From positions 248,001-312,000 of IMG/VR virus record IMGVR_UViG_3300023174_000038: a stretch of DNA of 64,000 nucleotides. The stretch is one strand, 5' to 3'. The notes beneath the pieces were generated by a model that saw only the letters and a program-made list of their open reading frames with translations, made no database searches and was not told the origin of the DNA. How positions within the stretch are numbered: position 1 is the first letter of the stretch; each line of letters starts with the position of its first letter. This document shows positions 14,811-51,394 of this stretch, in pieces. The position numbers and the translations under genes are program-made.

Positions 14811-16180
14811 ATTTTGTAGAACTATTTGAGGGTACAACACCCAAATTACCGGGTGCTGTAGGTGGCATCAAAGTTATGAGTATGGATCAATTCCTTGCTC
14901 AATCGGGTGATGAACCGGAAGAAAAAATAGATGAAATGTCTTCCGAAGAATTAGATAAAATGTCCCCTGAACAATTAGCACAGTTTACACATAAGGCTAG
15001 AACTGATAAAGCTAAGGTAGATCCCAAAACAATTGATCAGGCTTATGGTAAAAGTATGGATATAATGTTTCCGGATCGTAAAAAATCAGAACATAATAAA
15101 CAACAAGGTGTGGCGGAAGCAACCAAACTTCCAGCACAAACACGTGAACTAAAGGGTCAAGAACTAGATGATTACTTAGATAGAATTCGTAATCGTGAAA
15201 AGGGTAAAACAGACAAATATAAACTACCTTACATCCATCGGTCAAGTGTAGTAAAATACTACAATGAAGAAGGTAAACGCTACGATACAGACCAAATCAA
15301 AACAGCATTAGGCGTTCGTCCAAAGAAACTTCTTAAACAAAATGAGAAGATGAAACATAGTAATGGTGAACTAGAACAATTCTATAACATTGGTTTTGCC
15401 GCATTAGTTGGTATCGCACTAGACGAAGGAACTAACGAACTAATTGTAGTTAATACATGTCCGGGTGCTGGATCATGTAAAGTAGATTGTTTTGCTATGA
15501 AGGGAGGCAAAGTACAATTTGAAGGTCCTTGGTTAAGCGACGGAAGAATTCTTACATTCTTATTGAATGATCCAGATGGTTTCTTTAATCAATTAAGTGC
15601 AGAAATCACAAAAGAAGAAAAACAAGCACAAAAAGGTGGTTACAATTTAACTATTCGTTGGCATGATGCTGGTGATTTCTTTAGCCCAGAATATATGGAT
15701 CTAGCATTTAAGTTGGCGGCTGCCCATCCTGATGTTAAATTCTACGCTTATACAAAGATAGCCGATGCGGCATTAGGCCAAAAGCCAAGTAACTTTATTG
15801 TTAACTGGAGTGAAGGTGCAAGCACTAGCCAAGAGAAACAAGTTAAAGCACAGGATGCTAATTTAGATAAAACTAAAAATAGTCGTATTGTTCCAAGTAA
15901 GTTATTCTATGACTTGTTAAAGAAAGATAAGGATGGTAAGTTAGATAAAACTGCCGACGGTGCATGGCAACCACGTGATGCAGCCGCATTGGAAGAATTG
16001 AAAGATAGATTAGCGGCCGCATATAATCTAAAACGTGATAGTATCATTGATTACAATGAGATGATGGCCACCCCACAAAAGAATAACATTAAGAAATGGA
16101 ATGTTATTATTGCTCCGGGTGAGGGCGATATCAGTGCTAATAGACAAGATGTATTATCAACATTATTATTGAAACACTAA
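14807..16180 (+). CDS. Putative virion-internal protein with GP88-like (radical-SAM-related) domain
   Basis: N-term MNFVELFE; QGVAEA linker; CPGAGSCKVDCFA, IRWHDAGDF, FYAYTK. Confidence 0.7.
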   Translation: MNFVELFEGTTPKLPGAVGGIKVMSMDQFLAQSGDEPEEKIDEMSSEELDKMSPEQLAQFTHKARTDKAKVDPKTIDQAYGKSMDIMFPDRKKSEHNKQQGVAEATKLPAQTRELKGQELDDYLDRIRNREKGKTDKYKLPYIHRSSVVKYYNEEGKRYDTDQIKTALGVRPKKLLKQNEKMKHSNGELEQFYNIGFAALVGIALDEGTNELIVVNTCPGAGSCKVDCFAMKGGKVQFEGPWLSDGRILTFLLNDPDGFFNQLSAEITKEEKQAQKGGYNLTIRWHDAGDFFSPEYMDLAFKLAAAHPDVKFYAYTKIADAALGQKPSNFIVNWSEGASTSQEKQVKAQDANLDKTKNSRIVPSKLFYDLLKKDKDGKLDKTADGAWQPRDAAALEELKDRLAAAYNLKRDSIIDYNEMMATPQKNNIKKWNVIIAPGEGDISANRQDVLSTLLLKH

Positions 16181-21440: not shown

Positions 21441-21516
21441 TGTGTTCTCCTATGTTGTATTATAGCATAGGCAGCAGAATTTGTAAAGCGGGAATGATGC
21501 CAAAAGGCCGCTGTTC
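21441..21516 (-). promoter_or_regulatory. queD leader: sigma70 promoter embedded in structured RNA element
   Basis: TTTACA-17-TATAAT; AGCGG/CCGCT stem; GGCA/TGCC potential pseudoknot; CCTATG/CATAGG hairpin over RBS. Confidence 0.55.
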
Positions 21517-22223: not shown

Positions 22224-22909
22224 TATTTACATCCCTTGTTAGCAATCTGTAAGAACTCTTGTCGTGCCGCTGGATCTGTTTTAAATCCACCACCTAAACG
22301 ACAAGTAACTGTACTAGAGCCTGTATCTTCTACACCACGTGACTTAACGCAATAGTGTTGTGCATCAATCATAACTGCAACATCTTCTGTATCAAGGATG
22401 AACTGTAAGGTGTGAAATATTTGTTCAGTTAATCTTTCCTGTATTTGCGGACGTTTACTGAAATATTCTACGATACGGTTGATCTTACTAAGACCTAAAA
22501 CTTTTTGTTTAGGGACATAAGCTACAGTAGCCAATCCATCAATCACTACACCGTGATGTTCGCAGTTAGATTGAACATTAACATTACGCTCTACAACCAT
22601 TTCGTTGTATTGCATCTTGTTGTCAACTGTTGTGCATTTCGGAAAGTTTTCATCTTTAAGACCGAAATATATTTCATTAATATACATCTTAGCCATTCTA
22701 TTTGGGGTCTCACGAAGGCTATCATCATTTAAATCTACACCCACTGTTTTCCAAATAGTAGTAAATGCATCCTCTAAAATGTCAATTTTCTTTTTATTTT
22801 CTACTGCAAGAGCAGATTCGTTGATGGGAGTTTCTACTCCTACTTTAGTAAGATACTCTCTTACTTTTTTACCCAATATTGGGTCACATTTGGTTTTGTC
22901 AAAACTCAT
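22223..22909 (-). CDS. folE: GTP cyclohydrolase I
   Basis: ETPNR, CEHH, GLSKINR, RPQIQERLT, HYCVKSRG. Confidence 0.95.
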   Translation of the reverse strand: MSFDKTKCDPILGKKVREYLTKVGVETPINESALAVENKKKIDILEDAFTTIWKTVGVDLNDDSLRETPNRMAKMYINEIYFGLKDENFPKCTTVDNKMQYNEMVVERNVNVQSNCEHHGVVIDGLATVAYVPKQKVLGLSKINRIVEYFSKRPQIQERLTEQIFHTLQFILDTEDVAVMIDAQHYCVKSRGVEDTGSSTVTCRLGGGFKTDPAARQEFLQIANKGCK

Positions 22910-22924
22910 ATTGATTCTCCTTAC

Positions 22925-23767
22925 TCAAATTTGTTTATGATTTAAAAATGTAGGTTTAGTTAAATTCCAAACTAAACCATACTGATACTTCTTATCAGGA
23001 TTAATGGAAATGTCATTATCATTTCTATACTTTCCTTTTAACTCTCCTTCAAAAATTATTCTCTTTCCTGAAGGTTTGTATAATCTTCCGTAGCTTATAG
23101 TGTACTCTAATTTTATTAGTTCTTCAATTTTATCGGGTGAAAGAAATTTCTCTTCACCGTTTACTATACACCATTTCTTACCCTTAACTGCGGACTTACC
23201 ATACATACCATTAACTTCTCCATGTCTGGCCATTTGAGTCTTTGATCCAACTCTAAATTTTATTTCGCTAGTATTGATAATATTAGCAATACTAAAAATT
23301 TGGTGGTACAATGGCAATTGATGATACTTTATAATAGAATGCTCACCTAATATGATATTATATATAGTTATAGTATCTTTTCTAGGATTATTGAATGTTT
23401 TCTTTTTGTGTGATGCCACTGCCCTAGACGATGACCAATTGCTAGTTCGTATATTAGTTAAGCCGTATTTTTGCTTCAACTCCAATATCAATTTTAACTC
23501 TATGCATAGAGCCTCATCTTCTGTAAGACCTTCACTGATTTTTACAATCTTAGGGTTCAATCCTAAACTTTGTATTAACCTAATAGTGTTTAACTTATGA
23601 CTATTTTTATGTTTTCTAGTCGGTCTAGCATCTTTTAAGTGGTCAAAAAGTCTACTACCAATGCCCTTACCTATATAAAAAGGCTTCGCTGAAAAAGAAA
23701 AAACACTTGAATTATAACTTCCCTCTTCCATGGGATTTAAATATGCGTATACATAATACTGTGACAT
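22925..23767 (-). CDS. Free-standing GIY-YIG homing endonuclease
   Basis: YYVYAY...PFYIGKG..R...H...E...LTN; NGMYGK NUMOD-like motif; AT-rich insert. Confidence 0.82.
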   Translation of the reverse strand: MSQYYVYAYLNPMEEGSYNSSVFSFSAKPFYIGKGIGSRLFDHLKDARPTRKHKNSHKLNTIRLIQSLGLNPKIVKISEGLTEDEALCIELKLILELKQKYGLTNIRTSNWSSSRAVASHKKKTFNNPRKDTITIYNIILGEHSIIKYHQLPLYHQIFSIANIINTSEIKFRVGSKTQMARHGEVNGMYGKSAVKGKKWCIVNGEEKFLSPDKIEELIKLEYTISYGRLYKPSGKRIIFEGELKGKYRNDNDISINPDKKYQYGLVWNLTKPTFLNHKQI

Positions 23768-32539: not shown

Positions 32540-33181
32540 ATGAAACCCAAAGTTATATTGTATTTGGATCATCCTAGATGTTCCGTACAATCTTGCCACG
32601 GTATTATAAGGGCGCTTAGCCCAAAGTATGAAGTTGACATATTCCAGCAATATGAGATAAAAGAATCTAATTTTAAAAAATACGACATAATTGCCTTTCC
32701 CGGTGGAATTGGAGATAGTGATACATTTGATACTACTATCAGACCTAAAATGGATGTGATTAAAAATCAAATCAGCAAGGGAAAAAGATATCTTGGAATA
32801 TGTATGGGTGCTTTTTGGGCAGGTCATCATTATTTTGATATCCTCGATGATATTAAATGTGAGCAATACATTAAACAACCCGATAGCGATGTTCGTAGAC
32901 CATTTAGTACTACCGCACCTGTACTTTGGGAAGGCAAAAAATATAACATGTTTTTCTATGATGGTTGTTCATTAGTAGGAGACAATAGTAAATTTGAAAC
33001 TATTGCTACATATGTAAATAGTGATCCAATGGCTATAATACAAAACAATATAGGATTAATAGGTTGTCATCCTGAAAGTGATGAATATTGGTATGATAAA
33101 CCTTATTTAAAGAAATATTGGCATAACTTTGTACATCATCAATTGTTATTAGATTTTGTAGATAAGTTAATCAAACATTGA
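32540..33181 (+). CDS. Class I glutamine amidotransferase-like (BPL_N-like) protein
   Basis: FPGG, YLGICMGA nucleophile elbow, HPE. Confidence 0.82.
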   Translation: MKPKVILYLDHPRCSVQSCHGIIRALSPKYEVDIFQQYEIKESNFKKYDIIAFPGGIGDSDTFDTTIRPKMDVIKNQISKGKRYLGICMGAFWAGHHYFDILDDIKCEQYIKQPDSDVRRPFSTTAPVLWEGKKYNMFFYDGCSLVGDNSKFETIATYVNSDPMAIIQNNIGLIGCHPESDEYWYDKPYLKKYWHNFVHHQLLLDFVDKLIKH

Positions 33182-33768
33182 TTTTTACCTTCTACAATCT
33201 TTTTTACCAATTTAGGTAAACCCGGATTGACATGTAATGCATGTGGCATTAGTTCATTGCGAATATAATTTCGGGTATATCTGGAATTTTTATTTGATTC
33301 ATCTTCAATCCAGGGTACATTATGGCTTTCGCACCAATAGATAAATTCTTGTTTGCGTGTAGTTAGAAATGGTCTGATTACATTGTTGCGAGTTAACGGG
33401 ATAACTTTGGGCGTGCCGTGTAAGCTTGACCAAATATATGTTTCAACACAATCATCTAAATGATGACAGGTGACGACTGGTCCAAGCCCACTTAAAAAGT
33501 CATAGCGTTCTCTACGCCAGTATTCTTCTTGACTTTCTTTACTACCCTTTTGACTTCGTGGTGATCCATATAGCATTGGGATATTATTATCATTGCAATA
33601 TCTAGAAACAAACTCACTGGCTTTTTCACCGTTTTGTGTTCTATGATTAAAATGGGCGATAGTGATATCGTGTTTACGACTTAAAAAGTCAACTACTGCC
33701 ATGCTATCTACACCACCACTACATGCGATTGTGATACTTTTGGGTAAGGGTACTGTTAACTTAATCAT
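33139..33768 (-). CDS. tilS: tRNA(Ile)-lysidine synthetase, catalytic domain only
   Basis: SGGVDS, HFNH, RRERY, HHLDDCVET, RPFL, EDESN...RNYIR. Confidence 0.88.
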   Translation of the reverse strand: MIKLTVPLPKSITIACSGGVDSMAVVDFLSRKHDITIAHFNHRTQNGEKASEFVSRYCNDNNIPMLYGSPRSQKGSKESQEEYWRRERYDFLSGLGPVVTCHHLDDCVETYIWSSLHGTPKVIPLTRNNVIRPFLTTRKQEFIYWCESHNVPWIEDESNKNSRYTRNYIRNELMPHALHVNPGLPKLVKKIVEGKNQCLINLSTKSNNN

Positions 33769-34062: not shown

Positions 34063-35001
34063 TTATTGTATTCCTGATGAACCGGCTGAGCTATACAATG
34101 CTGCACTTAAAGGACCACGTACACTTGCTGTTGCTGTATCTGTTGCATATGTAATTCTATCCACTAATGACGTTGCAGAAAATCCTCCTGCAAACCAACC
34201 ATAACTGTTATTACCAACTGAGGTAAAATATCCTCTACTAGAGCTAAGTGGGCCACGAATACTAGCGGTAGCAGTATCTGATGCATATGTAATACGTGAA
34301 ACGGTTGATATAACACTACTTCCACCTGCCCACCACCCATATGTGGTATTATCAGAAGATGCTGCCTGTGCATATGTACTTAGACCAAGTGGACCACGTA
34401 CACTTGCCGTTGCTGTATCTGTTGCATATGTAATACGATTGACTGTTGACACACCGCCTGGTATACCTCCGCCACCAAACCAACCATCAGTACTAATTCC
34501 GGCCGCCGCAAACCTAGAATTAGCCAAACTAAGTGGACCACGCACACTTGCTGTTGTTGTATCTGTTGCATATGTTACACGATCTACTAATGACGTTGGT
34601 GCACCCAAAGTGACCCCGCCACCAAACCAACCATCAGTAGTATTTCCGGCCGCAGCTAAATAAAATTTGGCTGCACTTAATGGGCCCCGAACACTTGCTG
34701 TTGCTGTATCAGTTGCATATGTTATTCTATTTACGGCTGATGAAGGTCCATTAACGTTGCCACCGACCCAACCATTAGTAGTATTGCCGGCACCTGCTGC
34801 GCTGCCTGTACCTGTACTTAATGGTCCGCGAATACTTGTTGTAGTAGTATCTGTGGTAAATGTAATACGATTGACAGTACTACGTACAGCAGGATTTCCT
34901 CCACTGACCCATCCTGCTGTTGCTTCAGATGGAGGTGCTGCCGTAAGCGTCCATCCTCCGCCCGATATTGTTACACCGCCACCACTAAATGTTACTGACA
35001 T
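34063..35001 (-). CDS. Repeat (beta-propeller-like) virion/surface protein
   Basis: Six ~46 aa repeats GW.GG...V.RITYATDTATASVRGPLS. Confidence 0.75.
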   Translation of the reverse strand: MSVTFSGGGVTISGGGWTLTAAPPSEATAGWVSGGNPAVRSTVNRITFTTDTTTTSIRGPLSTGTGSAAGAGNTTNGWVGGNVNGPSSAVNRITYATDTATASVRGPLSAAKFYLAAAGNTTDGWFGGGVTLGAPTSLVDRVTYATDTTTASVRGPLSLANSRFAAAGISTDGWFGGGGIPGGVSTVNRITYATDTATASVRGPLGLSTYAQAASSDNTTYGWWAGGSSVISTVSRITYASDTATASIRGPLSSSRGYFTSVGNNSYGWFAGGFSATSLVDRITYATDTATASVRGPLSAALYSSAGSSGIQ

Positions 35002-36039: not shown

Positions 36040-36972
36040 TTAAGAACCGTAGGCTGCGGCTCCAAGTTCGCCTCTAGCAGTGCCCACCCCGGTAGTATCT
36101 GTAGCAACCACGCCTGTATTTGATACTAGATTAGTCATTGATACTCTTACTCCAACCTCACCGTATCCAAAGATAGCTTTATCAGTTCCATAACCTGCGG
36201 CTGCAAGATTCATTCTAGCAGTACCGACTCCGGTAGTATCAGTTGCGACAACACCGGTGTTTGATACTAGATTGGTAATTGAATAATAACCACCATCAAA
36301 TCCATAACCAAATATAGCTTTACCTGTACCGTAACCAGCGGCCGCCAAACTATTTCTAACAGTACCGACACCCGTGGTATCTGTTGCTACTACTCCTGTG
36401 TTTGACACTAGGTTGGTTACTGCTGTTCTAGCACTTCCATATCCATATCCAAAAATAGCTTGTCCACTACTGCCGTAGCCGGCAGCTGCCAATGCCTGTC
36501 TAGCTGTACCAACCCCTGTTGTATCTGTGGCTACTACGCCTGTGTTTGAAACTAAATTAGTCATTGAGAACACAATAGTATTATTTGTTCCATATCCAAA
36601 TAAGGCTTTATCAGTGCCATACCCTGCGGCCGCCAAACTAGTTCTAGCAGTGCCCACTCCAGTTGTGTCATTGGCAACCACGCCTGTATTACTTACTAAA
36701 TTGGTTATTGCCGTATTACCGGTAGAATACCCGTATCCAAAAATAGCTTTATCTGTACCGTAACCTGCGGCTGCAAGTTGATATCTAGCAGTGCCCACAC
36801 CAGTTGTATCTGTAGCAACTACACCCGCACTTGTTACTAGGTTGGTTATTGCTGTTACACCTACCCCACCAATGTATCCATATCCAAATATAGCTTTATT
36901 ACCGCCTGGAGGTGGTGTAATAGCCCATCCTCCGCCATTTAATGTTATTCCACCTGTAATTGTTATTGACAT
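36040..36972 (-). CDS. Repeat (beta-propeller-like) virion/surface protein
   Basis: Six ~47 aa repeats KAIFGYG...TNLVSNTGVVATDTTGVGTAR..LAAAGYG. Confidence 0.78.
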   Translation of the reverse strand: MSITITGGITLNGGGWAITPPPGGNKAIFGYGYIGGVGVTAITNLVTSAGVVATDTTGVGTARYQLAAAGYGTDKAIFGYGYSTGNTAITNLVSNTGVVANDTTGVGTARTSLAAAGYGTDKALFGYGTNNTIVFSMTNLVSNTGVVATDTTGVGTARQALAAAGYGSSGQAIFGYGYGSARTAVTNLVSNTGVVATDTTGVGTVRNSLAAAGYGTGKAIFGYGFDGGYYSITNLVSNTGVVATDTTGVGTARMNLAAAGYGTDKAIFGYGEVGVRVSMTNLVSNTGVVATDTTGVGTARGELGAAAYGS

Positions 36973-36982: not shown

Positions 36983-37936
36983 TTATTGAAAAATTTCTGG
37001 ATGTGCTTTGCCAAATATCTTAATATACTTGCCAGCCATTACATCCGCTTCAGCTTCTATTGGACTACCAGGATAACTATCACCCGGCTTAATCATATTT
37101 AATTCACCCTGACGTACATGTGTTAATTCATGGAACACAGTACGTAATATATCTACTAAATTTCTATTAGCACAATAAACCCATACTTCACCCGTCTCTG
37201 GATTATGTCTTCCAGTATGATGACCTTCTTGTGCTTCATCACTATCATAACTAAACTCTATCTTTGGAGTATTTTGTAAATTCAACTTCTTACTTGTCCA
37301 AGCAAGAAACTTCTGTACAATAGGATTACTATTCAAATCTTCTTGTTCAGCTTCTGTAATGTAGGGCTTTAATAACTCTGGATCATATCCTTTATGTCTA
37401 GCAGAATCTCGTAATCGTCTTAACCCTTTAGCTTCAATTTGTCTTATTCTATCTCTAGACAAGTCAAACCTATCACCAATCTGTTGTAATGTCATGTCAT
37501 ACCAAAATCTTAAAATTAATACTTTTCGTTGGTCATCGGTTAATCTGTCTAAGCCGTTTTGGATAATTTGTTTAATACTATCATCTGTTGCAGGCTCCTC
37601 ACCAGCTGGATCTTTATATGGTACTCGTTCTGCCCTATTATAAATATCGTTTGGATCATTTAATGTTGGCATTTTATTATGAGCTCCACGATATGTAGCA
37701 CCATCTGGGTTGTAATGTCGTCCTCCAACCTCATCTAGTTTATCTTTAATCCAATTGTCTGGAGTTTTATGATATTTTCTAACAAATAAATCATGCAATG
37801 CATCACCAGTAATACGGTGTTTCTTTGCTATGTTTTTCATTAGCTTATCAATGGTATTATAGTCGTGTTTCTCTAAGCTAGGAAGTTTCTTAGCTAGTTC
37901 AACTGCGGCTGATTCGTATAGTTCTATTGCTCTCAT
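36983..37936 (-). CDS. Mosaic putative virion-internal protein: sigma70 region 4 plus HExxH zincin
   Basis: Start MRAIELYE after TAAATA; LT..QR.VL.LRF...TLQQIG..FDLSRDRIRQIEAKGLRRLR; YITEA linker; FHELTH...EAEA. Confidence 0.78.
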   Translation of the reverse strand: MRAIELYESAAVELAKKLPSLEKHDYNTIDKLMKNIAKKHRITGDALHDLFVRKYHKTPDNWIKDKLDEVGGRHYNPDGATYRGAHNKMPTLNDPNDIYNRAERVPYKDPAGEEPATDDSIKQIIQNGLDRLTDDQRKVLILRFWYDMTLQQIGDRFDLSRDRIRQIEAKGLRRLRDSARHKGYDPELLKPYITEAEQEDLNSNPIVQKFLAWTSKKLNLQNTPKIEFSYDSDEAQEGHHTGRHNPETGEVWVYCANRNLVDILRTVFHELTHVRQGELNMIKPGDSYPGSPIEAEADVMAGKYIKIFGKAHPEIFQ

Positions 37937-37947
37937 ATTAGTATTTA

Positions 37948-38038
37948 TGCTCACTTTTGATTTCACAGTAGCGAATTGTTACATCAGGCCAGCAGCCGGC
38001 CCACACTTGAAAACGCAAAGGTCCTAAGGTAGTGTGTT
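37948..38038 (-). ncRNA. Candidate structured non-coding RNA
   Basis: GC-rich intergenic with stems CACACT/AGTGTG, GGCCG/TGGCC, TGAT..ACA/TGT..ATCA. Confidence 0.4.
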
Positions 38039-38039
38039 C

Positions 38040-38852
38040 TTAATCATTCGTCTTACATTTAGCACGTTTAGCATTGGTTAATGCTCCGTAATCTACTGGC
38101 CATTCTTTACCAGGCTGTAACTCTTTAGCGTTTGCAGGGAAATGGTACTTTACACCTGCATATTCTTGTATCTGTGCTAATGGAGCACGAAACTGTGTCA
38201 AATCATTACCCAAATTAACATATGGTTTCTTATGTGGGAACTGCCATCCAGCAACTTCATGTGTAACATTGTTAATAACAATCTTGTAGTAACCATGAGG
38301 AACAACTACACCATTACCAATCTTTTCATTACCTGTACCATAATATGCACCTACATAAATTGTGAATGGTTGTTTTAGTTGTACTGCCCATCCACGTATA
38401 CTTGTTTCTAATAGTTTCCATATGCCACGATTCAATGAACCATGTTGAGGATACATATTAGTCATTAAAAAACTTTCATATTCTACTTGTTGTGTCCAAG
38501 ATAGATCACCATCTGGTGCAGCATGACCTTTGTCATAACCCGTAGCTACATAATCATCAGGCTTTGCACCATCTTTAATACTAGCATCAGCAACAAAAGC
38601 GTTTGTTCTTGGGAAACAACCTAAAGCATTTTCTGGCTTAAGAGTGTATGCTACATATACTGGTATCTTTGCTGGCGAATCATATGCTACAAGATATGCT
38701 TCACGACATATTGGTTGTGATGGTCTTGCTGTTTGTGCAAATCCGTACGGACTATGTATTTGACATTGTTGTACTGGTAAGGGAGCACGTTGATCCCATG
38801 CAAATATATTTGTTGATATTAGTACTGTTGCTATTGCTATTATTTTTTTCAT
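38040..38852 (-). CDS. Secreted DNA/RNA non-specific endonuclease (NucA/EndA family)
   Basis: Signal peptide; YDKGHAAP, TNMYPQ...LNRGIW..LE, VPHGYYK. Confidence 0.9.
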   Translation of the reverse strand: MKKIIAIATVLISTNIFAWDQRAPLPVQQCQIHSPYGFAQTARPSQPICREAYLVAYDSPAKIPVYVAYTLKPENALGCFPRTNAFVADASIKDGAKPDDYVATGYDKGHAAPDGDLSWTQQVEYESFLMTNMYPQHGSLNRGIWKLLETSIRGWAVQLKQPFTIYVGAYYGTGNEKIGNGVVVPHGYYKIVINNVTHEVAGWQFPHKKPYVNLGNDLTQFRAPLAQIQEYAGVKYHFPANAKELQPGKEWPVDYGALTNAKRAKCKTND

Positions 38853-39938: not shown

Positions 39939-42900
39939 TTAGTCTTTCTTTTTTGTATTAACATTGATGGCTTTACCACTACGGTCAGGATTAGGATCTT
40001 CTCTACGTTTACGTTGAGCGGCACTTGCACGACCCTTCTTACCTAGACTATGTGCTTTACTTTGTGGCAAGCATTTTGGTTTACCTTCTCCTGGTTCTCT
40101 AGCACATGGACCTTTAATCTTTCCTTTAGTATCCATGCGAACCCACTTTTCTTTATTAAACCAATCATGCAAACTTTCATCTGCCCTTTCAATACCTTCT
40201 AGTATAGAACTTTCATTCTTCTTCCCACCGTTACCCCAGTTACTTGCGCCTTTGTTGCGACACTTAACTAATGCACCACTGGCATAAGCACTTGGCCATA
40301 CTTTATAACGACTCTTTACTTTGTAGTAGCAAGCATCTTTCTTTTCGTTCATTAATTCTTCACTAACCATTTCGCCACCACAGTGTGGGCAACTTTCACT
40401 GTGTTGGTCTTCATTTGTTTTATTTTTAGCACAACTACCCGGAAAGCCTGCTTTAGTACCAGCAACTCTATGATAGCCGGACCAGCATTTCAATTCATCT
40501 AGTTGATCTTTTGAATGGTCACCGTGTGTTTCACACATACCGCAGTCTTCACAGACCATTTCCATTTCAATGCTTTCATTGTGCTTCTTCTTACCTGCAC
40601 AATGAGCCTTTTGACTAAAGCCTTTAGGATGACTACAGTTAATACTGCTCTTATATTTTTGACTCCAGCCTTCATCCATCTCTTGTTCATTAACGTAAAT
40701 TGCGGCAGTTGTTTTATTTAAACTTTGTGGATCTTTTACGCCGGCTGCTACTTTAATTGCTTTAACTTTTTGTCTATAGTCATCAGCATATTCGGCTAAT
40801 CTGTAGCCTAACATTTTACCAATTTCTTCAGGTGTAGCTGGTTTATCTTGCGGAGTATTTGCACCAAAAGTTGTGTCTAGTATCTTAGGCCATGCCATCC
40901 AGACCATATTTGATAACTCTTTATATGCTTTGCTTCTTAATTCTTTAATTTGAGCTTCAGCCTCATCTTCAGAAATACTAGGTGCGGGTGCAGGAATAGT
41001 TCCTTTGAATGCTTGAGCATTACCGGCACCGCCTAATCCTGCGGCAGCTAATGCGCCGGCGCCTGCTGCCTTACCCATGTTACCTAAAAACCCTCTACGG
41101 TTCATATCAGCTTCTTTCAAACCTGATTTTTTACGTATATACAATCTATCCTGTAATATTGAAATAGCATTGTCTAACTTTTTATTCAATGATTGATAGT
41201 TATCTTTTGCACCATACTTAACGTGCATACTAGTATCAGTATCATTCTGCATTGCAGGAGTTAACAAACCTTTACGTTCTAATCTATCAACTAACTTATC
41301 TAATAGTTCTTGCTTTTGTATAGCATTATCTAATTGTGCTAATCTAGCTTTTAATACAGAATGTTTTTCACCAGGTTGTGCAACTGGTGTTGGTTGAAAT
41401 TCTCTACGTAAACCTTGTTGTGCTTTTTGTACTGTGTTCTTTTCAAAATCTTGTCTCCAAGCTTCTATTTCAGCTTCACGCTGTTTCTCTATAGCTAATT
41501 TAGCTTGAATCAACGCATCCAATGATGTAGATTTTAATTGATCACCTAAGTTTTCATCAATTGATGCATAACGCTTATCATCTAAATCATCGTGGTAACT
41601 TCTTTGTGGTGGTTTTTTTAGCTCTATTGGTTTCTTAGATGAACCTCTATAACCACGTTCCCATGCCGCTGCACCTGCTGCCGCACTTTTACCATTTTTA
41701 ACAAAGTGATTAATGACTTCTTGTTTACTGTTAAATCTAGGTGATTCTATACCTTCATTTGTTGCCATTTCGCCATCATTACTATGACCATAATATTTGG
41801 CTACTTTTTGTAAATCAGCAGAATTTCTATCGTTAAGATAATCAGTTACTAAATCATGTATCTGATATCTTTGTTCTTGCGGGGCTGGTAATTCTATTTC
41901 ACCTTCACTTGCATCAGCAATATGTGCGGCGCCGGGACTGTCTAAGAACCATATCTCATCATCCTCATCCCATTCTAATCCCCATTTGTCTATTGTTGCA
42001 GTTAATACATAGTTGTTAGTAGTACCTACTACAAATTTGTTACCGCCTATATAACGTGAGCTATTTGGTTGACCGTAATCTTTTGGTCCTTTAGGGCCGC
42101 CAGTTTGTACAAATTCATTTATACCTTGACTGATACCAGATTTCTTTGTATCATTAGCAAATTGTTTTTTAGTTGCACGAACAATACCACTGAAACGTTT
42201 ATCACCACGCTTGTAATCGCCCTCTTTATCAGCTTTTCCTGCATCGGCAGCGGCCGCTGTTTTATATTGTGCTAGTTTCTCATTAGAGATTTCATCTAGT
42301 TGTGATTCAGGCATTAATCCGTGCTTTGTAATACGAGCATCTAATTCATCACGCTCTTTGGAATATTTTTGTATAAGTTCTTTATTACCTACTTGAATTG
42401 CTTGTCTAAGTTTTTCCTGAATGGCATCTGCTAAATCATAGTATTGATCCATTTTCATTCTAGTGGTATTATCTTCTTTTATTGTTTTACCTTGACCTAA
42501 TTGTTGTAAATCACTTGTTAATACATCTTGTGTAACACTACCCATACCTTTTGAAATCGTAATGCGAGAATGTTTACGATCCTTACTCATAGCAACTACT
42601 TTTGATGGTTGTCCAAAATACTTAACAGTATCACCTATCTGTATGTTCTTCATAGATACATTACCAACATTAACCGGTTTATCACCTGCAAAGTTACCTT
42701 GATCTCCCCATGGGTCATCTAAACTTTCATTTGTACCAGTAGCTAATCTATCATGGTCACTATCACGTTGGGCTTTTTCTGCCGCTGCCTTCATAGCACG
42801 ACCTTTAGCAAAATCTTTTTCTTGTCTTATTAAACCATATGGATCATACTCATCATCATCTGTTTGTGTATGTCTACCACGTTTAGGATATGATGGTGCA

Positions 42901-42983
42901 TCTGCCCCGTATTCTCTTGCTGGATCATTATGTCCGTAAAAAGGATTGGATTCGTTTATTATACCTTTTAGAATATTGCTCAT
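39939..42983 (-). CDS. Large mosaic putative virion-internal polyprotein
   Basis: Many short unrelated modules separated by xxE linkers (IINES, TNES, IKED, LDEI, INEF, TNEG, IDEN, LKEA, MDEG, LDEL, MNEK, ILEG). Confidence 0.75.
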   Translation of the reverse strand: MSNILKGIINESNPFYGHNDPAREYGADAPSYPKRGRHTQTDDDEYDPYGLIRQEKDFAKGRAMKAAAEKAQRDSDHDRLATGTNESLDDPWGDQGNFAGDKPVNVGNVSMKNIQIGDTVKYFGQPSKVVAMSKDRKHSRITISKGMGSVTQDVLTSDLQQLGQGKTIKEDNTTRMKMDQYYDLADAIQEKLRQAIQVGNKELIQKYSKERDELDARITKHGLMPESQLDEISNEKLAQYKTAAAADAGKADKEGDYKRGDKRFSGIVRATKKQFANDTKKSGISQGINEFVQTGGPKGPKDYGQPNSSRYIGGNKFVVGTTNNYVLTATIDKWGLEWDEDDEIWFLDSPGAAHIADASEGEIELPAPQEQRYQIHDLVTDYLNDRNSADLQKVAKYYGHSNDGEMATNEGIESPRFNSKQEVINHFVKNGKSAAAGAAAWERGYRGSSKKPIELKKPPQRSYHDDLDDKRYASIDENLGDQLKSTSLDALIQAKLAIEKQREAEIEAWRQDFEKNTVQKAQQGLRREFQPTPVAQPGEKHSVLKARLAQLDNAIQKQELLDKLVDRLERKGLLTPAMQNDTDTSMHVKYGAKDNYQSLNKKLDNAISILQDRLYIRKKSGLKEADMNRRGFLGNMGKAAGAGALAAAGLGGAGNAQAFKGTIPAPAPSISEDEAEAQIKELRSKAYKELSNMVWMAWPKILDTTFGANTPQDKPATPEEIGKMLGYRLAEYADDYRQKVKAIKVAAGVKDPQSLNKTTAAIYVNEQEMDEGWSQKYKSSINCSHPKGFSQKAHCAGKKKHNESIEMEMVCEDCGMCETHGDHSKDQLDELKCWSGYHRVAGTKAGFPGSCAKNKTNEDQHSESCPHCGGEMVSEELMNEKKDACYYKVKSRYKVWPSAYASGALVKCRNKGASNWGNGGKKNESSILEGIERADESLHDWFNKEKWVRMDTKGKIKGPCAREPGEGKPKCLPQSKAHSLGKKGRASAAQRKRREDPNPDRSGKAINVNTKKKD

Positions 42984-42984: not shown

Positions 42985-43866
42985 TCACGCTTTCTTATTC
43001 TTGTTATCTAACATGCCACGCTTATTAGCTGTTGCCCAAGCAATGTTCTCCGCTTCTTTTTTACTGTGACCTAATTTCTTTTCACTTTGTGCTACATGCT
43101 TAACCATACGGTCTACTTTAGCACCTTCATCTATTGGTGCATGAACTGGACATTGGTCTTGACCATGTGTTCTACACACACATTTCAAATTAGGTTTGCC
43201 TTCTGCTACGCCCTGTTGACCATACGTATCAAGAATTTGTCTAACATAAAAATTATAAAAACCACGACGGCTATTGTATTCTCTATCTCCAAGTACAGTC
43301 TTTAGTGCTTTTACAGCATCAGTTACTTCTGGGCCACGCATTATTTTTAATGAGTCAGTAACTAGTGTATCACCTCTTTGTGAGCCTTCTGATACACCTT
43401 GAACTTGTTTACCTTCTAAGTATTCACGTATAGTGTTTAGATAATCATTGGCTTTAATAATCTTTTCTTGTACCCAACCATCAAGACCTTCTTCTTCACT
43501 AAGGTCTTTAATCATTGAATAAACTTGTTGAGCATTCTTTGCGGCACTGAATAGATCACTACGTGCCATCTCAACTTCGTGGTCTATACGACTTTGACCA
43601 TGTGGCACAAATCCATTTTTACGACTACGTCCTTGTCCCGGAACGACAATAACATCATCTTCTTGTAGTTCTGCTTCACTTATTTCAGCACTTTCATTAA
43701 TGCTGTTAGCATATGGAGCACTAGTCTTTTTACCCTTGAATAGTGTGCCTACTTTCTTGCCACCATATATGCTAGGATTTCCCCTAGATTGTGTGCCACC
43801 TAATGGTGAATTTACAGTAGCTATTGCACCTGCTGTTGTAGTTTCAGTGATTTGTTTGATTTTCAT
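42985..43866 (-). CDS. Mosaic putative virion-internal polyprotein
   Basis: MKIKQITE; SINES, QGVSEG, QGVAEG, IDEG linkers; DHEVEMARSDL...WVQEKI module. Confidence 0.72.
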   Translation of the reverse strand: MKIKQITETTTAGAIATVNSPLGGTQSRGNPSIYGGKKVGTLFKGKKTSAPYANSINESAEISEAELQEDDVIVVPGQGRSRKNGFVPHGQSRIDHEVEMARSDLFSAAKNAQQVYSMIKDLSEEEGLDGWVQEKIIKANDYLNTIREYLEGKQVQGVSEGSQRGDTLVTDSLKIMRGPEVTDAVKALKTVLGDREYNSRRGFYNFYVRQILDTYGQQGVAEGKPNLKCVCRTHGQDQCPVHAPIDEGAKVDRMVKHVAQSEKKLGHSKKEAENIAWATANKRGMLDNKNKKA

Positions 43867-47595: not shown

Positions 47596-48321
47596 TTAAA
47601 TAGCTTCTGGGCGTTTTTCTAATTTGTAACGTTTTCCAAGAAATTCCCCGTGCATTAGTGCTAGATAGCTTAATAGGGTTTCGTCATCATAATCAATAAA
47701 GTGATTACTATTGGTATAACGATAGCGCCAACTCCATGAAGGAGCAGTATTATTGTATCCTTGTAACCAGTATTTTAATGACGGGCTAGGATGTAAGTCT
47801 TTGGAACGTTTCAATAAATCATCTAATTGCGTAACAAATGATTCTTGGATCATTTTAGATTTCAAATAAACCCTATACTTATGTTTAGGGTCATTAACAA
47901 ATGCTTTTATTCCTACAAAATTATTTGTTTGAGCTTCTGTATAATCATAAAAGATACCATTTTTAATACTTTCACTAGTCTTTAATAAGGCTAAATCATT
48001 GCTAAAGATTGCTATTCTATTACTCTCAATACGAACTAATCCGGTATTGTTTTCTTTAATCATATTACGAAAATCTATAAACTTCCCAAGAGCCTCTAGA
48101 TTTTCTGTAACTACCGGTCTATCTGCATCTTTTATCTTTTTCCAACCAGTTAAGATATTATATCGTTTCATCAACCCATCAAAGTTTTTTTCATACATAG
48201 CATATCTAACACCCTCTATAGAGAATCTTACACGATACTTGTATTTGCCATAGTAATCACTATCCCGATAATCGTAAAAATCAATACCCGGAGTATCAGT
48301 TGCTAATTTCAATAATCCCAT
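47596..48321 (-). CDS. Hypothetical protein
   Basis: Two internally similar KYxYRV subdomains. Confidence 0.7.
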   Translation of the reverse strand: MGLLKLATDTPGIDFYDYRDSDYYGKYKYRVRFSIEGVRYAMYEKNFDGLMKRYNILTGWKKIKDADRPVVTENLEALGKFIDFRNMIKENNTGLVRIESNRIAIFSNDLALLKTSESIKNGIFYDYTEAQTNNFVGIKAFVNDPKHKYRVYLKSKMIQESFVTQLDDLLKRSKDLHPSPSLKYWLQGYNNTAPSWSWRYRYTNSNHFIDYDDETLLSYLALMHGEFLGKRYKLEKRPEAI

Positions 48322-50572
48322 CGGATCCTACTTTCGCTATTGATTTCTGTACTACATTGAACTCAATTTTATCATCTACTAATACACAAGTTACTGTAGC
48401 ATTTTTAATACGTTCAAACAATACTTTCTTACTGAGAGGTACACGAATCAATTCATCAATCTTCCGAGCTAATGGACGAGCACCCATCTTCTTATCATAA
48501 CCCTGTTCAGCCAAATAATCAATTACTGGCTCAGTTAAATTCAAACTGACATTATACTTGTCAAGTAATGATTTCTTTAGTTCTTCTGTAAACTTAATTA
48601 CAATCTTCTTAATAGCCAATGTATCTAGTTTACCAAACTTACAAATCAAATCAACACGATTTCTAAATTCTGGTTTGAAGAACTCTTTAATTGCTTTATC
48701 ATCCTCACCTGTCTTTTCTTGGCTACCGAATCCGATATTGTTTTTCTCACTATCACTACTACCCAAGTTACTAGTCATAATGATGATAGTATTTTTACAG
48801 TTAACTTCTTTACCATTACTACCAGTGATACGACCTTCATCTAACATCTGTAAGAAGATATTAAAGATATCCGGATGAGCTTTCTCTACTTCATCAAAGA
48901 GTAAGATACTATGTGGGTTCTTGCTCAAATCATTGATTAATCGTCCACCACCTACTTGACTATCACCAAAGCCAACATAGCCAGGAGGAGGACCAATCAA
49001 ACTTGATACAGAATGTTTCTCACTATATTCTGACATATCATACTTAAGTAATGTCATGTCAAGGTTTTTACTTAGTAGTTTAGCTAATTCTGTTTTACCT
49101 GTACCAGTTGGGCCTAAGAAGATAAAGCTTGCTGTAGGTTTGTTCTCATTACCAATACCAGCAAATGACACATATACACGTTCTAATACTTGTTCAACTG
49201 TTTCATCTTGTCCATACAGTTTACCTTTAATGTTAACTTCAAGGCTACTAATACGGTCGTAGTTATCATCGTTTAGTTTATCAGCAGGTACACCAGTGAA
49301 TCGTTCAACTTGTTCGTGTATTAGTTCTTTGGTAATTAATGCACCTTTGTTCATTGCAACACGTTGTTTAGCACAAGCCGCATCTAGCAAATCAATAGAT
49401 TTGTCAGGGTTTTTACGGTCATGAATGTAACGTGCTGAACTATCAACTGCGGCAGTTATTGCTTCCTCAGTGATTTCTACTTCATGGAAATCATTCAACC
49501 GTGAGCTTAAACCTTTGAGGATACGAATTGTACTATCATGTGATGGTTCATCAATAGATACACGATAGAATCTACGCATCAATGCACGATCCTTCTCAAA
49601 ACTTTCGTAGTATTCTTCCCAAGTTGTACTAGCAATAACTTTAAGTGTACCTTTAGTGATAGCTGGTTTAATCATATTAGCAAAGTCAATACTTCCACTA
49701 GTAGATGAACCACTACCTTTCATGGTATGTGCTTCATCAATGAATAGTACTGATTTCTTTTTTGTGTTTAATGCATCCAGTACCTGTTTAACTTTTTCTT
49801 CAAAGTCACCACGATATTTACTTCCGGCAAGCAATGCACCTACTTCAAGTGAGTATAGTTCATGTCCGTGTAAGAATTCCGGTACTGTTTTATCAACTAG
49901 CATTTGTGCTAGACCTTCAGCGATAGCAGTTTTACCTACACCCGGATCACCTACCATCAATACATTTGATTTGAAACGTTTAGCAAGAACATTAATCATA
50001 TCATCAAGTTCTGTACTACGACCAATCAACGGTTCAAGTTTACCTTGTCGTGCAAGATCGGTTAAGTTAGTAGTATATTCTTCAAGGATTTCATCAGCTT
50101 GACTTTCTGATAGTTTAGCAGTGAACTCTTGACCCTTATATGTTTTTTGCCAATGTGCCACGAAATCATTTTTATTGATACCGTATTTTAATAAGAAATA
50201 ATGTGCATGACTATTGCCCTCACTAGCGATAGAGAGATATAAGTCAATAGTAGTTACTTGTCTACGACCAGTAAACAATACTTGTGTTACAGAACGATTC
50301 ATTACACGTTCCAAGCTATTTGTTTTGCGTGGTTGAACTTCTGTATCTGGATCTACTTTAGCTACAATAGCGTGTAAGCTATCAATATATGAAGTAACCT
50401 CTTGAATCATATTTGGGGTATCGCACCCAAAACTATCCAAACATTTTTTAAATGGTGTATGTGTTATAAGAGATAACAGTAAATGTTCAATTGTACAATA
50501 TTGATGTTTACGTTGTTTAGACAACTCAATAGCCTGTTCAATGATGGCTTCAATTTCGGGTGAATTATTCAC
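48296..50572 (-). CDS. clpA: ClpA-type AAA+ chaperone
   Basis: Clp N domain, GDPGVGKT, FIDEAH, GPTGTGKT, DMSEY, FDEVEKAHP, GARPL. Confidence 0.93.
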   Translation of the reverse strand: MNNSPEIEAIIEQAIELSKQRKHQYCTIEHLLLSLITHTPFKKCLDSFGCDTPNMIQEVTSYIDSLHAIVAKVDPDTEVQPRKTNSLERVMNRSVTQVLFTGRRQVTTIDLYLSIASEGNSHAHYFLLKYGINKNDFVAHWQKTYKGQEFTAKLSESQADEILEEYTTNLTDLARQGKLEPLIGRSTELDDMINVLAKRFKSNVLMVGDPGVGKTAIAEGLAQMLVDKTVPEFLHGHELYSLEVGALLAGSKYRGDFEEKVKQVLDALNTKKKSVLFIDEAHTMKGSGSSTSGSIDFANMIKPAITKGTLKVIASTTWEEYYESFEKDRALMRRFYRVSIDEPSHDSTIRILKGLSSRLNDFHEVEITEEAITAAVDSSARYIHDRKNPDKSIDLLDAACAKQRVAMNKGALITKELIHEQVERFTGVPADKLNDDNYDRISSLEVNIKGKLYGQDETVEQVLERVYVSFAGIGNENKPTASFIFLGPTGTGKTELAKLLSKNLDMTLLKYDMSEYSEKHSVSSLIGPPPGYVGFGDSQVGGGRLINDLSKNPHSILLFDEVEKAHPDIFNIFLQMLDEGRITGSNGKEVNCKNTIIIMTSNLGSSDSEKNNIGFGSQEKTGEDDKAIKEFFKPEFRNRVDLICKFGKLDTLAIKKIVIKFTEELKKSLLDKYNVSLNLTEPVIDYLAEQGYDKKMGARPLARKIDELIRVPLSKKVLFERIKNATVTCVLVDDKIEFNVVQKSIAKVGSDGIIEISN

Positions 50573-50596
50573 ATCCAGTTCCTTTTAAAATAATAT

Positions 50597-51394
50597 TTAC
50601 TGTGTTTTAGATTGCAAAATGCTATCAGTTATACGACTGTCTATATTATCAGGTATAAAGGGTTTTAGCAAGATGATTTGGTCGCCATATGCATTAGTAC
50701 CTTGTATAGGCATTCCATGTCCGGCTAATTTTAAATGCATAAATGGTTGTGTTTTTGATGGGACAGTTACCTCTAGTGATTTCCCATTAATGGTAGTAAA
50801 TTGAAATGTAGATCCTACAATCAAATCCAATACAGATATAGAATGATTAGTATGTAAGTCATTCATTCTTCTTTCATATTTTAAATGATTATGTACCCTA
50901 TATTCTACTATTAAGTCATGTGAATCAACTACCTTTTCATAACGTACTTGTCCACCATCAGGTATACCTTTTGGAATATTTACCCTTACCATATGTAATC
51001 CAGATGGTGTTTGTAGTTTTAATAGTTCTTCACCGCCATTATAAACTTGTTCTAAACTAATCCAATAGGTAGTCCTATATGTGTTTTGTTGTTGCGGGTG
51101 TTGTTGTCTAAACATTTGTCCAAACAGATCATCCATATTGAAACCATTCATATTGAAATGAAATCCACCACCCGGGAATCCTTGAAACGGATTACCTTGT
51201 GGCATTGGGTTATCATATTGTTGACGTTGTTGTGGGTCTGAAAGAATGCGATATGCTTCTTCAATCTTTTGAAATGTAGAAGTATCGCCGCCCTTATCAG
51301 GATGATGTTTACCTGCTAATTTTCTATATGCTTTTTTTATGTCGTCGGCATTAGCATTTTTACCAACGCCTAATGTTGAGTAATGGTCTGTCAT
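50597..51394 (-). CDS. DnaJ/CbpA-like co-chaperone (no Zn finger)
   Basis: J-domain HPD, G/F region, C-terminal substrate domain. Confidence 0.9.
   Translation of the reverse strand: MTDHYSTLGVGKNANADDIKKAYRKLAGKHHPDKGGDTSTFQKIEEAYRILSDPQQRQQYDNPMPQGNPFQGFPGGGFHFNMNGFNMDDLFGQMFRQQHPQQQNTYRTTYWISLEQVYNGGEELLKLQTPSGLHMVRVNIPKGIPDGGQVRYEKVVDSHDLIVEYRVHNHLKYERRMNDLHTNHSISVLDLIVGSTFQFTTINGKSLEVTVPSKTQPFMHLKLAGHGMPIQGTNAYGDQIILLKPFIPDNIDSRITDSILQSKTQ

What the first reader, a model, noticed from the sequence alone, without database searches (positions are those of the whole stretch)
40690..41115. Cryptic twin-arginine signal peptide exposed only after predicted protease cleavage
Seen: in the middle of the 1014 aa protein, directly after the GLKE linker, is ADMNRRGFLGNMGKAAGAGALAAAGLGGAGNAQA-FKG. 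This is a textbook Tat signal (xRRxFL, Ala/Gly-rich h-region, AQA peptidase site) followed by a ~105 aa helical domain. Tat signals normally work only at N-termini. Inference: head maturation unmasks the signal so the injected fragment is routed to the membrane/periplasm (for example for exclusion) or jams the Tat translocon. An internal start at Met 41105 is the alternative, but it has no clear RBS.
Basis: partly seen in the sequence, partly recalled or inferred. Interest (0 to 1): 0.78.

Follow-up and report, generated by a model that had tools for sequence, protein, structure and literature searches.

The report
Hidden export signal inside phage polyprotein
A giant freshwater phage has a Tat-type bacterial export signal buried in the middle of a long multi-part protein, inside a swappable cassette bounded by likely protease cut sites; the pattern recurs in dozens of related phages, so these phages may pre-load proteins meant for the next host's periplasm.

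Summary
Residues 625-658 of the 1014-aa ORF (window 39939-42983, minus strand) have the three parts of a Tat-type signal: NRRGFLG, a weakly hydrophobic Ala/Gly core, and AQA. A helical-hairpin domain follows.

The signal is not a one-off. It opens a 147-codon cassette (40671-41111) bounded by LKE|A and MDE|G. A co-occurring strain lacks or replaces exactly this cassette.

Comparable internal signals occur in dozens of mosaic proteins of related AT-rich freshwater/marine T4-like phages. Nearly all follow a Glu-ending junction 4-5 residues before RR. Some precede periplasm-type domains (TonB/TolA C-terminal, LysM plus lytic transglycosylase) or carry lipoboxes.

Family members start with leaders resembling T4 capsid-targeting sequences. 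One family member lies between the portal and gp21-protease genes.

Best reading (about 0.4): cleavage after Glu unmasks a working export signal, probably by the prohead protease, on a protein delivered to the next host.

Cleavage, packaging and Tat dependence are not shown. The window's own signal scores below the curated Tat HMM cut-offs. No gp21 gene was found in the window.

Internal initiation is unlikely as a general mechanism, because sister cassettes have CTA or ATA in place of ATG.

The parts
39939..42983 (-). 1014-aa mosaic multi-module protein (host gene of the finding)
   Evidence: ORF and translation. BLASTP breakpoints against 120 homologs define modules at about 1-90, 135-290, 385-624, 625-771, 772-805, 822-862 and 863-1013. 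Positional orthologs lie between the cytidylyltransferase-like and ferritin/Dps genes in related contigs.
42951..42983 (-). N-terminal leader MSNILKGIINE, resembling a T4 capsid-targeting sequence
   Evidence: Nearly invariant across the family even where the following region differs. T4 IPII/IPIII begin MKTYQEFIAE and Alt begins MELITELFDE. In the T4 capsid-targeting sequence (CTS), targeting maps mainly to residues 4 and 7 and processing to residues 8 and 10 (PMC9026906).
41112..41120 (-). Upstream junction L-K-E (putative cleavage after Glu624)
   Evidence: Coordinates verified. 30 of 34 distinct contexts have [LIVMF]-x-E with Glu 4-5 (or 8) residues before RR, against a 13% background. This is also the exact boundary of the strain-level indel.
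40671..41111 (-). 147-codon cassette A625-E771 (signal plus passenger)
   Evidence: A co-occurring contig in run X1 joins 40669 to 41111, skipping 441 nt; what lies between is not known. Otherwise collinear homologs lack it (P0028, P0030, P0035, P0045).
41010..41111 (-). Tat-type signal: n-region ADMN-RR (RR at 41094-41099), h-region GFLGNMGKAAGAGALAAAGLGGAG (41022-41093), c-region AQA (41010-41018)
   Evidence: TIGR01409 scores 14.0, below its 16.7 cut-off. The RR box is 75-81% identical in P0123 and P0124, whose cassettes are only 38-52% identical overall.
40671..41009 (-). Passenger F659-E771: orphan helical hairpin ending in VNE/MDE junctions
   Evidence: AF2 helices at cassette residues 48-82 and 94-122. 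No Pfam hit, no Foldseek PDB match with E below 1, best atlas score 0.63, and only 5 relatives among 1.84 billion cluster representatives. P0122 has the passenger without the signal.
42985..43866 (-). Upstream co-oriented 293-aa gene with leader MKIKQITE; its orthologs elsewhere carry internal Tat-type cassettes
   Evidence: Leader. Related ORFs in L022 and L049 carry SVTE|ADMNRRGFLG at residue 172 and DTDE|DMSRRGFLKG at residue 207. It shares a module with the L146 polyprotein in a head gene cluster.
15095..15130 (+). Empty insertion site (..NKQQ-GVAE|ATKL..) in the GP88-domain protein 14807-16180 (leader MNFVELFE)
   Evidence: 93%-identical orthologs in L048 and L071 carry a 113-aa in-frame cassette here: NVNE|AG-MNRRGFLKG...VAGC (lipobox)...LNE|ATKLP (Pfam TAT_signal 23.4 bits).

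Best explanation
The segment is a working Tat-type export signal. It opens a self-contained, exchangeable cassette (signal plus small passenger) embedded in a mosaic, leader-bearing polyprotein of a T4-related jumbo phage.

The cassette is bounded on both sides by short junctions ending in Glu, the kind of site cut by T4-family prohead proteases. The proposed sequence of events is:
1. The N-terminal leader takes the polyprotein into the prohead core.
2. The protease cuts at the junctions, leaving ADMN-RR... as a new N-terminus.
3. The fragments travel with the DNA into the next cell.
4. Host Tat, the route open to ready-made proteins, exports the passenger to the periplasm.
5. Signal peptidase cuts after AQA.

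Shown: the signal's anatomy, cassette behaviour, recurrence and conservation; periplasm-type passengers in sister cassettes; leader similarity to the T4 CTS; and a family member inside a head gene cluster.

Inferred: cleavage, packaging, ejection, Tat dependence, and the passenger's function. Early envelope modification or superinfection exclusion is a guess.
For: - Signal anatomy is present and the hydrophobic core is unique in the protein.
- Internal signals recur with distinct passengers in the protein database and in IMG/VR. h-regions are weakly hydrophobic, with mean KD mostly 0.3-1.2.
- Curated Tat models pass on sister cassettes.
- Passengers include TonB_2/TolA C-terminal (5e-19) and LysM plus SLT. 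Lipobox variants LSGC and VAGC occur.
- The cassette is a unit: an exact 441-nt skip in a co-occurring strain, and a 113-aa insertion at a Glu junction in a 93%-identical ortholog.
- Glu junctions are enriched just before RR: 30 of 34 contexts against a 13% background.
- Leaders resemble the T4 CTS (PMC9026906).
- A family member with a HicA domain lies between the Portal_T4 and Peptidase_S77 genes.
- The GWSQKYK and CWxGY modules lie on either side of the signal in different proteins.
- The region after the cassette is strongly basic (+15), like DNA-associated internal head proteins.
Against: - No direct evidence of cleavage, packaging or export.
- The window's own signal is below the curated Tat cut-offs and lacks the consensus Lys.
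- No gp21 gene is in the window, and the scan for one did not return this contig.
- The window gene sits among replication and chaperone genes, not head genes.
- Contexts share ancestry, so 30 of 34 is not 30 independent events.
- Modules 1-620 are always upstream and DUF5872 always downstream of the signal, which a fixed-topology model also predicts.
- In minimal forms (L052, L068, P0124) the leader could simply be a long n-region.
- No cultured relative carries such a cassette.
Confidence: 0.4

Rival explanations
1. Loop-type export without prior cleavage. The full-length protein is made in the infected cell. The internal signal engages Tat with the N-terminal 620 residues left in the cytoplasm, and everything downstream is exported and released by signal peptidase.
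For: - Internal Tat signals can work, as in the Streptomyces Rieske protein.
- Modules 1-620 are always upstream and DUF5872 always downstream of the signal.
- This needs no packaging step.
Against: - The GWSQKYK and CWxGY modules occur upstream in 8 proteins and downstream in 15-17.
- Cassettes are bounded by Glu junctions on both sides and are inserted between otherwise unchanged modules.
- The downstream part is strongly basic (+15), which is odd for a periplasmic cargo.
- No upstream transmembrane segment exists, unlike Rieske.
Confidence: 0.15
2. Nested gene. Translation starts at Met627 (ATG at 41105), giving an ordinary N-terminal Tat precursor during infection.
For: - Met two residues before RR is present in most cassettes.
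- Anti-SD pairing upstream (mean -2.8 kcal/mol) equals that of genuine starts and exceeds random internal ATGs (p = 0.0015).
- The gene's own start context resembles the internal one.
- T4 gene 21 itself has an internal start.
Against: - Five sister cassettes keep an intact signal with CTA, ATA or no candidate codon at that position.
- No SD motif is conserved, and the purine-rich Asp/Glu codons alone explain the pairing.
- Minimal forms start at the leader's ATG; P0124's has a GGAG upstream.
- No RNA run was listed for testing.
Confidence: 0.12
3. The signal is real, but it is released by some other protease in the producing cell. The polyprotein is then a way to make several proteins at once, and export happens during the same infection.
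For: - Glu junctions and cassette structure.
- The gene lies outside the head gene cluster.
- An exported LysM-SLT protein could act in lysis.
Against: - No peptidase domain is in the protein or its neighbours.
- Leaders resemble the T4 CTS, and a family member sits next to gp21.
- T4-family prohead proteases are the known enzymes that cut after Glu at such short motifs.
Confidence: 0.1
4. The segment is not an export signal in use. It is either a relic of captured secreted-protein genes or an Ala/Gly-rich hydrophobic segment with another role, such as membrane contact during ejection or contacts inside the capsid.
For: - The window's signal is sub-threshold in Tat models.
- The passenger has no known fold or function.
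- P0122 carries the passenger without a signal, and the window's GP88 protein lacks the cassette its orthologs have.
Against: - RRGFLG is invariant where the rest of the cassette has diverged to 38-52% identity.
- All three signal regions persist across different passengers, including AxA sites and lipoboxes.
- Passengers include domains that act in the periplasm.
Confidence: 0.2

Closest known systems
T4 internal head proteins and Alt, with capsid-targeting sequences cut by gp21
   Same: A short N-terminal leader ends in hydrophobic-x-Glu. It is encoded by a T4-related phage, and a family member lies next to the gp21 protease gene. The logic of packaging, cleavage and delivery with the DNA is shared.
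   Different: T4 internal proteins are single-domain with one or two cuts and act in the cytoplasm. Here a chain of at least seven modules has junctions between modules and a second targeting signal behind a junction. Packaging and cleavage are untested.
Polyvalent proteins of phages and conjugative elements (Iyer et al. 2017, PMC5512222)
   Same: Many unrelated modules sit in one phage polypeptide, predicted to be injected with the DNA and released by proteolysis. A relative carries a HicA toxin domain.
   Different: No embedded peptidase is present. The modules are mostly small orphan domains. The paper does not contain the terms signal peptide, twin-arginine or periplasm.
Bipartite presequences of thylakoid-lumen proteins (transit peptide followed by a Tat signal)
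   Same: Two targeting signals lie in series, and a protease removes the first and exposes a Tat signal (PMC10267391).
   Different: That system is eukaryotic organelle import with a different protease. Here the first 'compartment' would be a virus capsid, and delivery crosses from one cell to the next.
Internal Tat signal of the Streptomyces Rieske protein
   Same: A twin-arginine signal lies far from the N-terminus and directs Tat transport of the domain behind it (PMC13186574; PMC3471239).
   Different: In Rieske the signal follows Sec-inserted membrane helices and stays as an anchor. Here there is no upstream hydrophobic segment and an AxA cleavage site is present.
Ordinary N-terminal Tat signal peptides (PF10518, TIGR01409), including those on other phage proteins
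   Same: RR-x-F-L, a weakly hydrophobic core and AxA. Other phage contigs carry the same MNRRGFLKG at true N-termini (L043-L046, L053 and others).
   Different: The position differs: residue 627 of 1014, always behind a leader or a Glu junction in this phage group. The window copy scores below the curated cut-offs.

Membership tests
Tat (twin-arginine) signal peptide | Consensus S/T-R-R-x-F-L-K | tested here: inconclusive
   The window has N-R-R-G-F-L-G: RR, F and L are present, and the Lys is missing (a Lys lies four residues further on). Sister cassettes have S/N-RRGFLKG.
Tat (twin-arginine) signal peptide | Score above the curated cut-off of PF10518 or TIGR01409 | tested here: not met
   Window: TIGR01409 14.0 against 16.7, and no PF10518 hit. 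Met by sister cassettes P0100, P0060, P0114, P0044, P0033, L048 and L068.
Tat (twin-arginine) signal peptide | Weakly hydrophobic uncharged h-region followed by an AxA peptidase site | tested here: met
   A 21-residue uncharged run, a maximum 19-residue KD mean of 1.02, and AQA at residues 656-658.
Tat (twin-arginine) signal peptide | Located at the N-terminus of the translated product | tested here: not met
   Residue 627 of 1014. No relative has the signal at the extreme N-terminus; the shortest forms keep a 9-13 residue leader.
Tat (twin-arginine) signal peptide | Export depends on TatABC and on the RR pair | not testable with these tools
   Needs a reporter assay. The host is unknown.
T4-type capsid-targeted internal head protein | A 10-20 residue N-terminal propeptide ending in hydrophobic-x-Glu | tested here: met
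   MSNILKGIINE compared with T4 MKTYQEFIAE and MELITELFDE.
T4-type capsid-targeted internal head protein | gp21-type prohead protease (Peptidase_S77) in the same genome | tested here: inconclusive
   None among the window ORFs scanned. Relatives by PolB have one (the RaK2-like jumbo phage pEa_SNUABM_47), and so does L146.
T4-type capsid-targeted internal head protein | Present in the virion and cut at the predicted site | not testable with these tools
   No cultured relative and no proteome available.
T4-type capsid-targeted internal head protein | Association with head-morphogenesis genes | tested here: inconclusive
   The window gene lies between cytidylyltransferase-like and Dps genes. Family member L146 3335-5494 lies between Portal_T4 and Peptidase_S77. 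The cyanophage relative lies between gp15 and gp16 in P-SSM2 and between gp16 and gp17 in S-SM2. T4 ip genes are themselves scattered.
Polyvalent proteins (Iyer et al. 2017) | Several disparate domains in one phage-encoded polypeptide | tested here: met
   At least seven shuffled modules. Relatives add Sigma70_r4, TonB_2 and HicA.
Polyvalent proteins (Iyer et al. 2017) | Embedded peptidase domain for self-release | tested here: not met
   No peptidase family in Pfam or PHROGs scans of the protein.
Rieske-type internal Tat signal | Signal preceded by Sec-inserted transmembrane helices | tested here: not met
   No hydrophobic segment upstream of residue 625.

The most novel reading that the evidence does not exclude
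These phages load their capsids with precursor chains in which a capsid-targeting leader and a masked Tat signal act in series. Head maturation unmasks the signal. The ejected, ready-made fragment then uses the new host's Tat system to reach the periplasm within moments of infection. It would be the first virion-delivered cargo addressed to a compartment other than the cytoplasm, with swappable cassettes (TonB/TolA decoys, wall-binding lytic enzymes, lipoproteins) as an arms-race toolkit.
Probability: 0.3. Interest if true: 0.85.

Novelty: new variant of a known kind. Interest (0 to 1): 0.72.

Why it matters
If the signal works after cleavage, phage-injected proteins are not limited to the cytoplasm. 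A capsid could deliver envelope-acting proteins that work before any phage gene is expressed, for example to block rival phages or loosen the wall.

It would also be a prokaryotic case of serial targeting signals, so far a hallmark of organelle import. And it would identify a large, unannotated family of mosaic proteins in abundant lake and ocean phages as processed multi-cargo precursors.

The cassette with its junctions could serve as a tool for delivering proteins to the periplasm through phage heads. Even if the mechanism proves different, the recurrent internal export signal needs an explanation.

Tried and rejected
- Megablast of the gene against cultured phages found no match. tblastn found only the C-terminal modules in cyanomyophages. 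The TonB and P0060-type cassettes have no cultured-phage match.
- Passenger function was not resolved: no Pfam or NCBIfam hit, ESM Atlas best 0.63, Foldseek PDB nothing below E = 1.
- Standalone N-terminal version: an exhaustive HMMER search of the cluster-representative library found five relatives and none with the signal at the extreme N-terminus.
- Transcript evidence: no RNA run was listed, so start sites could not be examined.
- gp21 protease in this genome: not in the window. I ran no further search on this.
- Candidate promoter-like element ACTATTTACGGA is not enriched: 12 matches against 6.9 expected. Dropped.
- 'Jamming of Tat': nothing bears on it.
- Literature: no paper combines capsid targeting with twin-arginine. 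The 'internal/cryptic Tat signal' search returned nothing on phages.
Full report
**Observation**

The window holds a 1014-aa ORF on the minus strand (39939-42983). Residues 625-658 read ADMN-RR-GFLGNMGK..., then an Ala/Gly-rich stretch, then AQA, followed by FKG.
- This is the only hydrophobic stretch in the protein. The top 19-residue hydropathy mean is 1.02, too weak for a membrane helix and typical of Tat signals.
- None of 200,000 shuffles of the protein produced a comparable pattern, and no other listed window ORF has one.
- AlphaFold2 gives a disordered signal and then two long helices, a helical hairpin of moderate confidence.

One caveat applies: the window's copy falls below the curated Tat models (TIGR01409 14.0 against 16.7; no PF10518 hit).

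**Genome**

The window is bases 248,001-312,000 of a 348,701-bp IMG/VR contig (L001 is 100% identical). The runs holding it are mostly lake and freshwater metagenomes.
- GC is about 36%.
- The family-B DNA polymerase is closest (43-48%) to jumbo T4-related myoviruses such as Phosso, Atu_ph07 and RaK2/K64-1.
- Neighbouring genes encode DnaJ, ClpB, a cytidylyltransferase-like protein, Dps/ferritin, a signal-bearing nuclease and a Sigma70_r4 protein.

**The signal belongs to a cassette**

BLASTP against 120 homologs shows a mosaic family with sharp breakpoints. One unit spans residues 622/625 to 771 and is missing from otherwise collinear proteins.

In the lake sample that holds the phage, a co-occurring contig (depth 16 against about 91) joins 40669 to 41111. 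That skips exactly 441 nt, or 147 codons, from Ala625 to Glu771; the tool could not tell whether other letters replace them. The unit is bounded by LKE|A on one side and by VNE..MDE|G on the other.

A second case lies in the same genome lineage. Close relatives L048 and L071 have neighbouring genes 92-97% identical to the window's. Their ortholog (93% identical) of window ORF 14807-16180 carries a 113-aa in-frame insertion, NVNE|AG-MNRRGFLKG...VAGC...LNE|ATKLP. The window has only ...KQQGVAE|ATKLP at that point.

The signal can also be separated from its passenger. P0122 has the window-type passenger without it.

**Recurrence**

Among the stored homologs, 34 distinct internal contexts carry RRxF[LIMV] plus a small/hydrophobic stretch.
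- Positions range from residue 36 to 917, and about ten unrelated passengers follow.
- In 30 of the 34, a hydrophobic-x-Glu ends 4-5 (or 8) residues before RR, against 13% for random positions in the same proteins. The contexts share ancestry, so this is not 30 independent events.
- A DNA-pattern scan of IMG/VR for E-[AD]-D-M-[NS]-RRGF found 25 loci. By construction the motif is internal in all of them, at ORF positions 37-638. Five are contigs of 199-349 kb.
- An unbiased scan for M-[NS]-RRGFLKG found 35 loci of two kinds. Various other phages, both GC-rich and AT-rich, have true N-terminal signals. A set of AT-rich contigs has signals that are internal or preceded by a leader.
- Minimal forms exist: MRFKEILE|D-MSRRGFLKG (L052, L060), MKINEIITE|G-MNRRGFLKG (L068), and MSDMRALLDIVNE|AEAVDQS-RRGFLG (P0124, whose leader ATG has a GGAG upstream).

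**Are these real export signals?**

Several lines say yes for the class.
- Curated Tat models pass on sister cassettes.
- h-regions are 15-26 residues long and weakly hydrophobic.
- c-regions keep AxA, and two variants carry lipoboxes (LSGC, VAGC).
- Two passengers are domains that act in the periplasm: TonB_2/TolA C-terminal in P0044 (5e-19; precomputed PF13103 in P0089), and LysM plus SLT lytic transglycosylase in L052.
- In the distant cassettes P0123 and P0124 (52% and 38% identical overall), the first 16 residues around RR are 81% and 75% identical (my count). The RR box is thus the most constrained part.

The window's own passenger is an orphan. It has five relatives among 1.84 billion cluster representatives, no Pfam family and no fold match.

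**Evidence for packaging and cleavage**

- T4 IPII and IPIII begin MKTYQEFIAE|A, and Alt begins MELITELFDE|D.
- In the T4 CTS, targeting maps mainly to residues 4 and 7 and processing to residues 8 and 10. T4-family prohead proteases cut after Glu at short motifs (PMC9026906; PMC5694885).
- The family's N-terminus MSNILKGI(I/L)NE is nearly invariant even where the next region differs.
- Other window ORFs begin MRATEFIIE, MRFTEIITE, MNFVELFE and MKIKQITE.
- In some relatives such a leader is followed directly by a module that is internal in the window protein. For example, P0119 has MKISEILTE|GWSQKYK where the window has MDE|GWSQKYK.
- In contig L146 the gene order is sheath, tube, Portal_T4, a 719-aa member of this mosaic family (with a HicA toxin domain), a 135-aa ORF, Peptidase_S77, scaffold, Gp23. 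In T4 that slot holds the prohead core genes 67 and 68.
- Cyanomyophage relatives of the C-terminal modules lie among the neck and terminase genes: between gp15 and gp16 in P-SSM2, and between gp16 and gp17 in S-SM2. S-SM2 gene 108 begins MKTLKQFLKE and ends in the GWSQKYK-type module.

Against this, no gp21 gene was found in the window. A scan with a gp21 alignment returned 80 other contigs. The window gene is not in a head cluster, and nothing shows cleavage.

**Rivals**

- *Internal initiation at Met627.* Anti-SD pairing upstream equals that of genuine starts, so it cannot be dismissed on RBS grounds. However, sister cassettes keep intact signals with CTA (L156, L157), ATA (L158, L016) or no start-like codon (P0124) at that position. 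It is therefore not the general mechanism.
- *Loop-type export of the uncleaved protein.* This is mechanistically possible, given the Rieske precedent, and it fits the fixed position of modules 1-620 and of DUF5872. It fits poorly with modules found on either side of the signal, with cassettes flanked by junctions on both sides, and with the strongly basic downstream region.
- *A relic or a non-export role.* The conservation pattern and the periplasmic passengers argue against it, but it is the fallback for the window's sub-threshold copy.

**Comparison with known systems**

The nearest kinds are:
- T4 internal proteins.
- Polyvalent injected proteins. PMC5512222 contains none of the terms signal peptide, twin-arginine or periplasm.
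- Bipartite thylakoid presequences, where removing the first signal exposes a Tat signal (PMC10267391).

No paper in the library combines capsid targeting with twin-arginine, and the 'internal/cryptic Tat signal' search returned nothing on phages.

**Verdict**

This is a new variant of a known kind. The pattern is robust and the proposed mechanism is testable, but its key steps remain inferred.

Noticed in passing
window 14807-16180 (+); L048 9568-11172; L071 7712-9430: The GP88-domain protein (leader MNFVELFE) lacks a 113-aa Tat-lipoprotein cassette that its 93%-identical orthologs in two related contigs carry at a Glu junction. This is a presence/absence polymorphism of an export cassette between near-identical phages.
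   Followed up: yes
L146 3335-5494 (IMGVR_UViG_3300036944_001020): A 719-aa mosaic-family protein with a HicA toxin domain (PF07927, 3e-11) lies between the T4-type portal and prohead protease genes. It may be a virion-delivered mRNA interferase.
   Followed up: partly
window 36983-37966 (-); P0100 / L017 3123-5612: A Sigma70 region-4 protein probably starts at an internal MRAIELYE leader (the listed start is GTG). In a related phage the Sigma70_r4 domain is fused into the positional ortholog of the 1014-aa polyprotein, upstream of its Tat-type signal.
   Followed up: partly
window 38040-38852 (-): A DNA/RNA non-specific endonuclease (PF01223, 1e-36) begins with what reads as an ordinary Sec-type N-terminal signal (MKKIIAIATVLISTNIFA; judged by eye, not tested), two genes from the polyprotein. 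The phage therefore also encodes a conventionally exported envelope-space enzyme.
   Followed up: no
window 19498-23767 and 33139-33768 (-): GTP cyclohydrolase I, a radical-SAM protein and a PP-loop ATPase lie in this stretch. This looks like a 7-deazaguanine (queuosine-type) base-modification pathway, with a GIY-YIG endonuclease gene among them.
   Followed up: no
window 48296-51394 (-): The phage encodes a ClpB-like double-AAA chaperone (758 aa) next to a DnaJ. The pair is conserved in related contigs (L016, L022).
   Followed up: no
window 40002-40168, 40503-40669, 43175-43341: Assembler depth rises 3- to 5-fold over the flanks in lake metagenomes exactly at short modules (DUF6321-like, GWSQKYK-type). 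These modules are shared by many co-occurring phages.
   Followed up: partly
window 34063-35001 and 36040-36972 (-): Two paralogous roughly 310-aa proteins have Gly-rich N-termini (MSVTFSGGGVTISGGGW.. and MSITITGGITLNGGGW..) and no confident family match (only a sub-threshold DUF6531 hit for 34063-35001).
   Followed up: no
L043-L046, L063 (IMG/VR, GC 33-35%): Unrelated AT-rich phage contigs encode 500-790-aa proteins that start directly with MNRRGFLKG, with no upstream start. These are conventional N-terminal Tat-type signals on large phage proteins without a Pfam match.
   Followed up: no
window 13460-13484; L034 upstream of the MRITEIITE gene: The 18-nt element AAGTCAACTATTTACGGA lies 7 nt (window) to 8 nt (L034) before the start of orthologous leader-bearing genes. 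The 12-nt core is not enriched in the window as a whole (12 matches against 6.9 expected).
   Followed up: partly
L016 8530-9999: The gene next to the positional ortholog P0044 also carries an internal VAE|ADMNRRGFLK signal, so a single locus can hold two export cassettes in adjacent genes.
   Followed up: no
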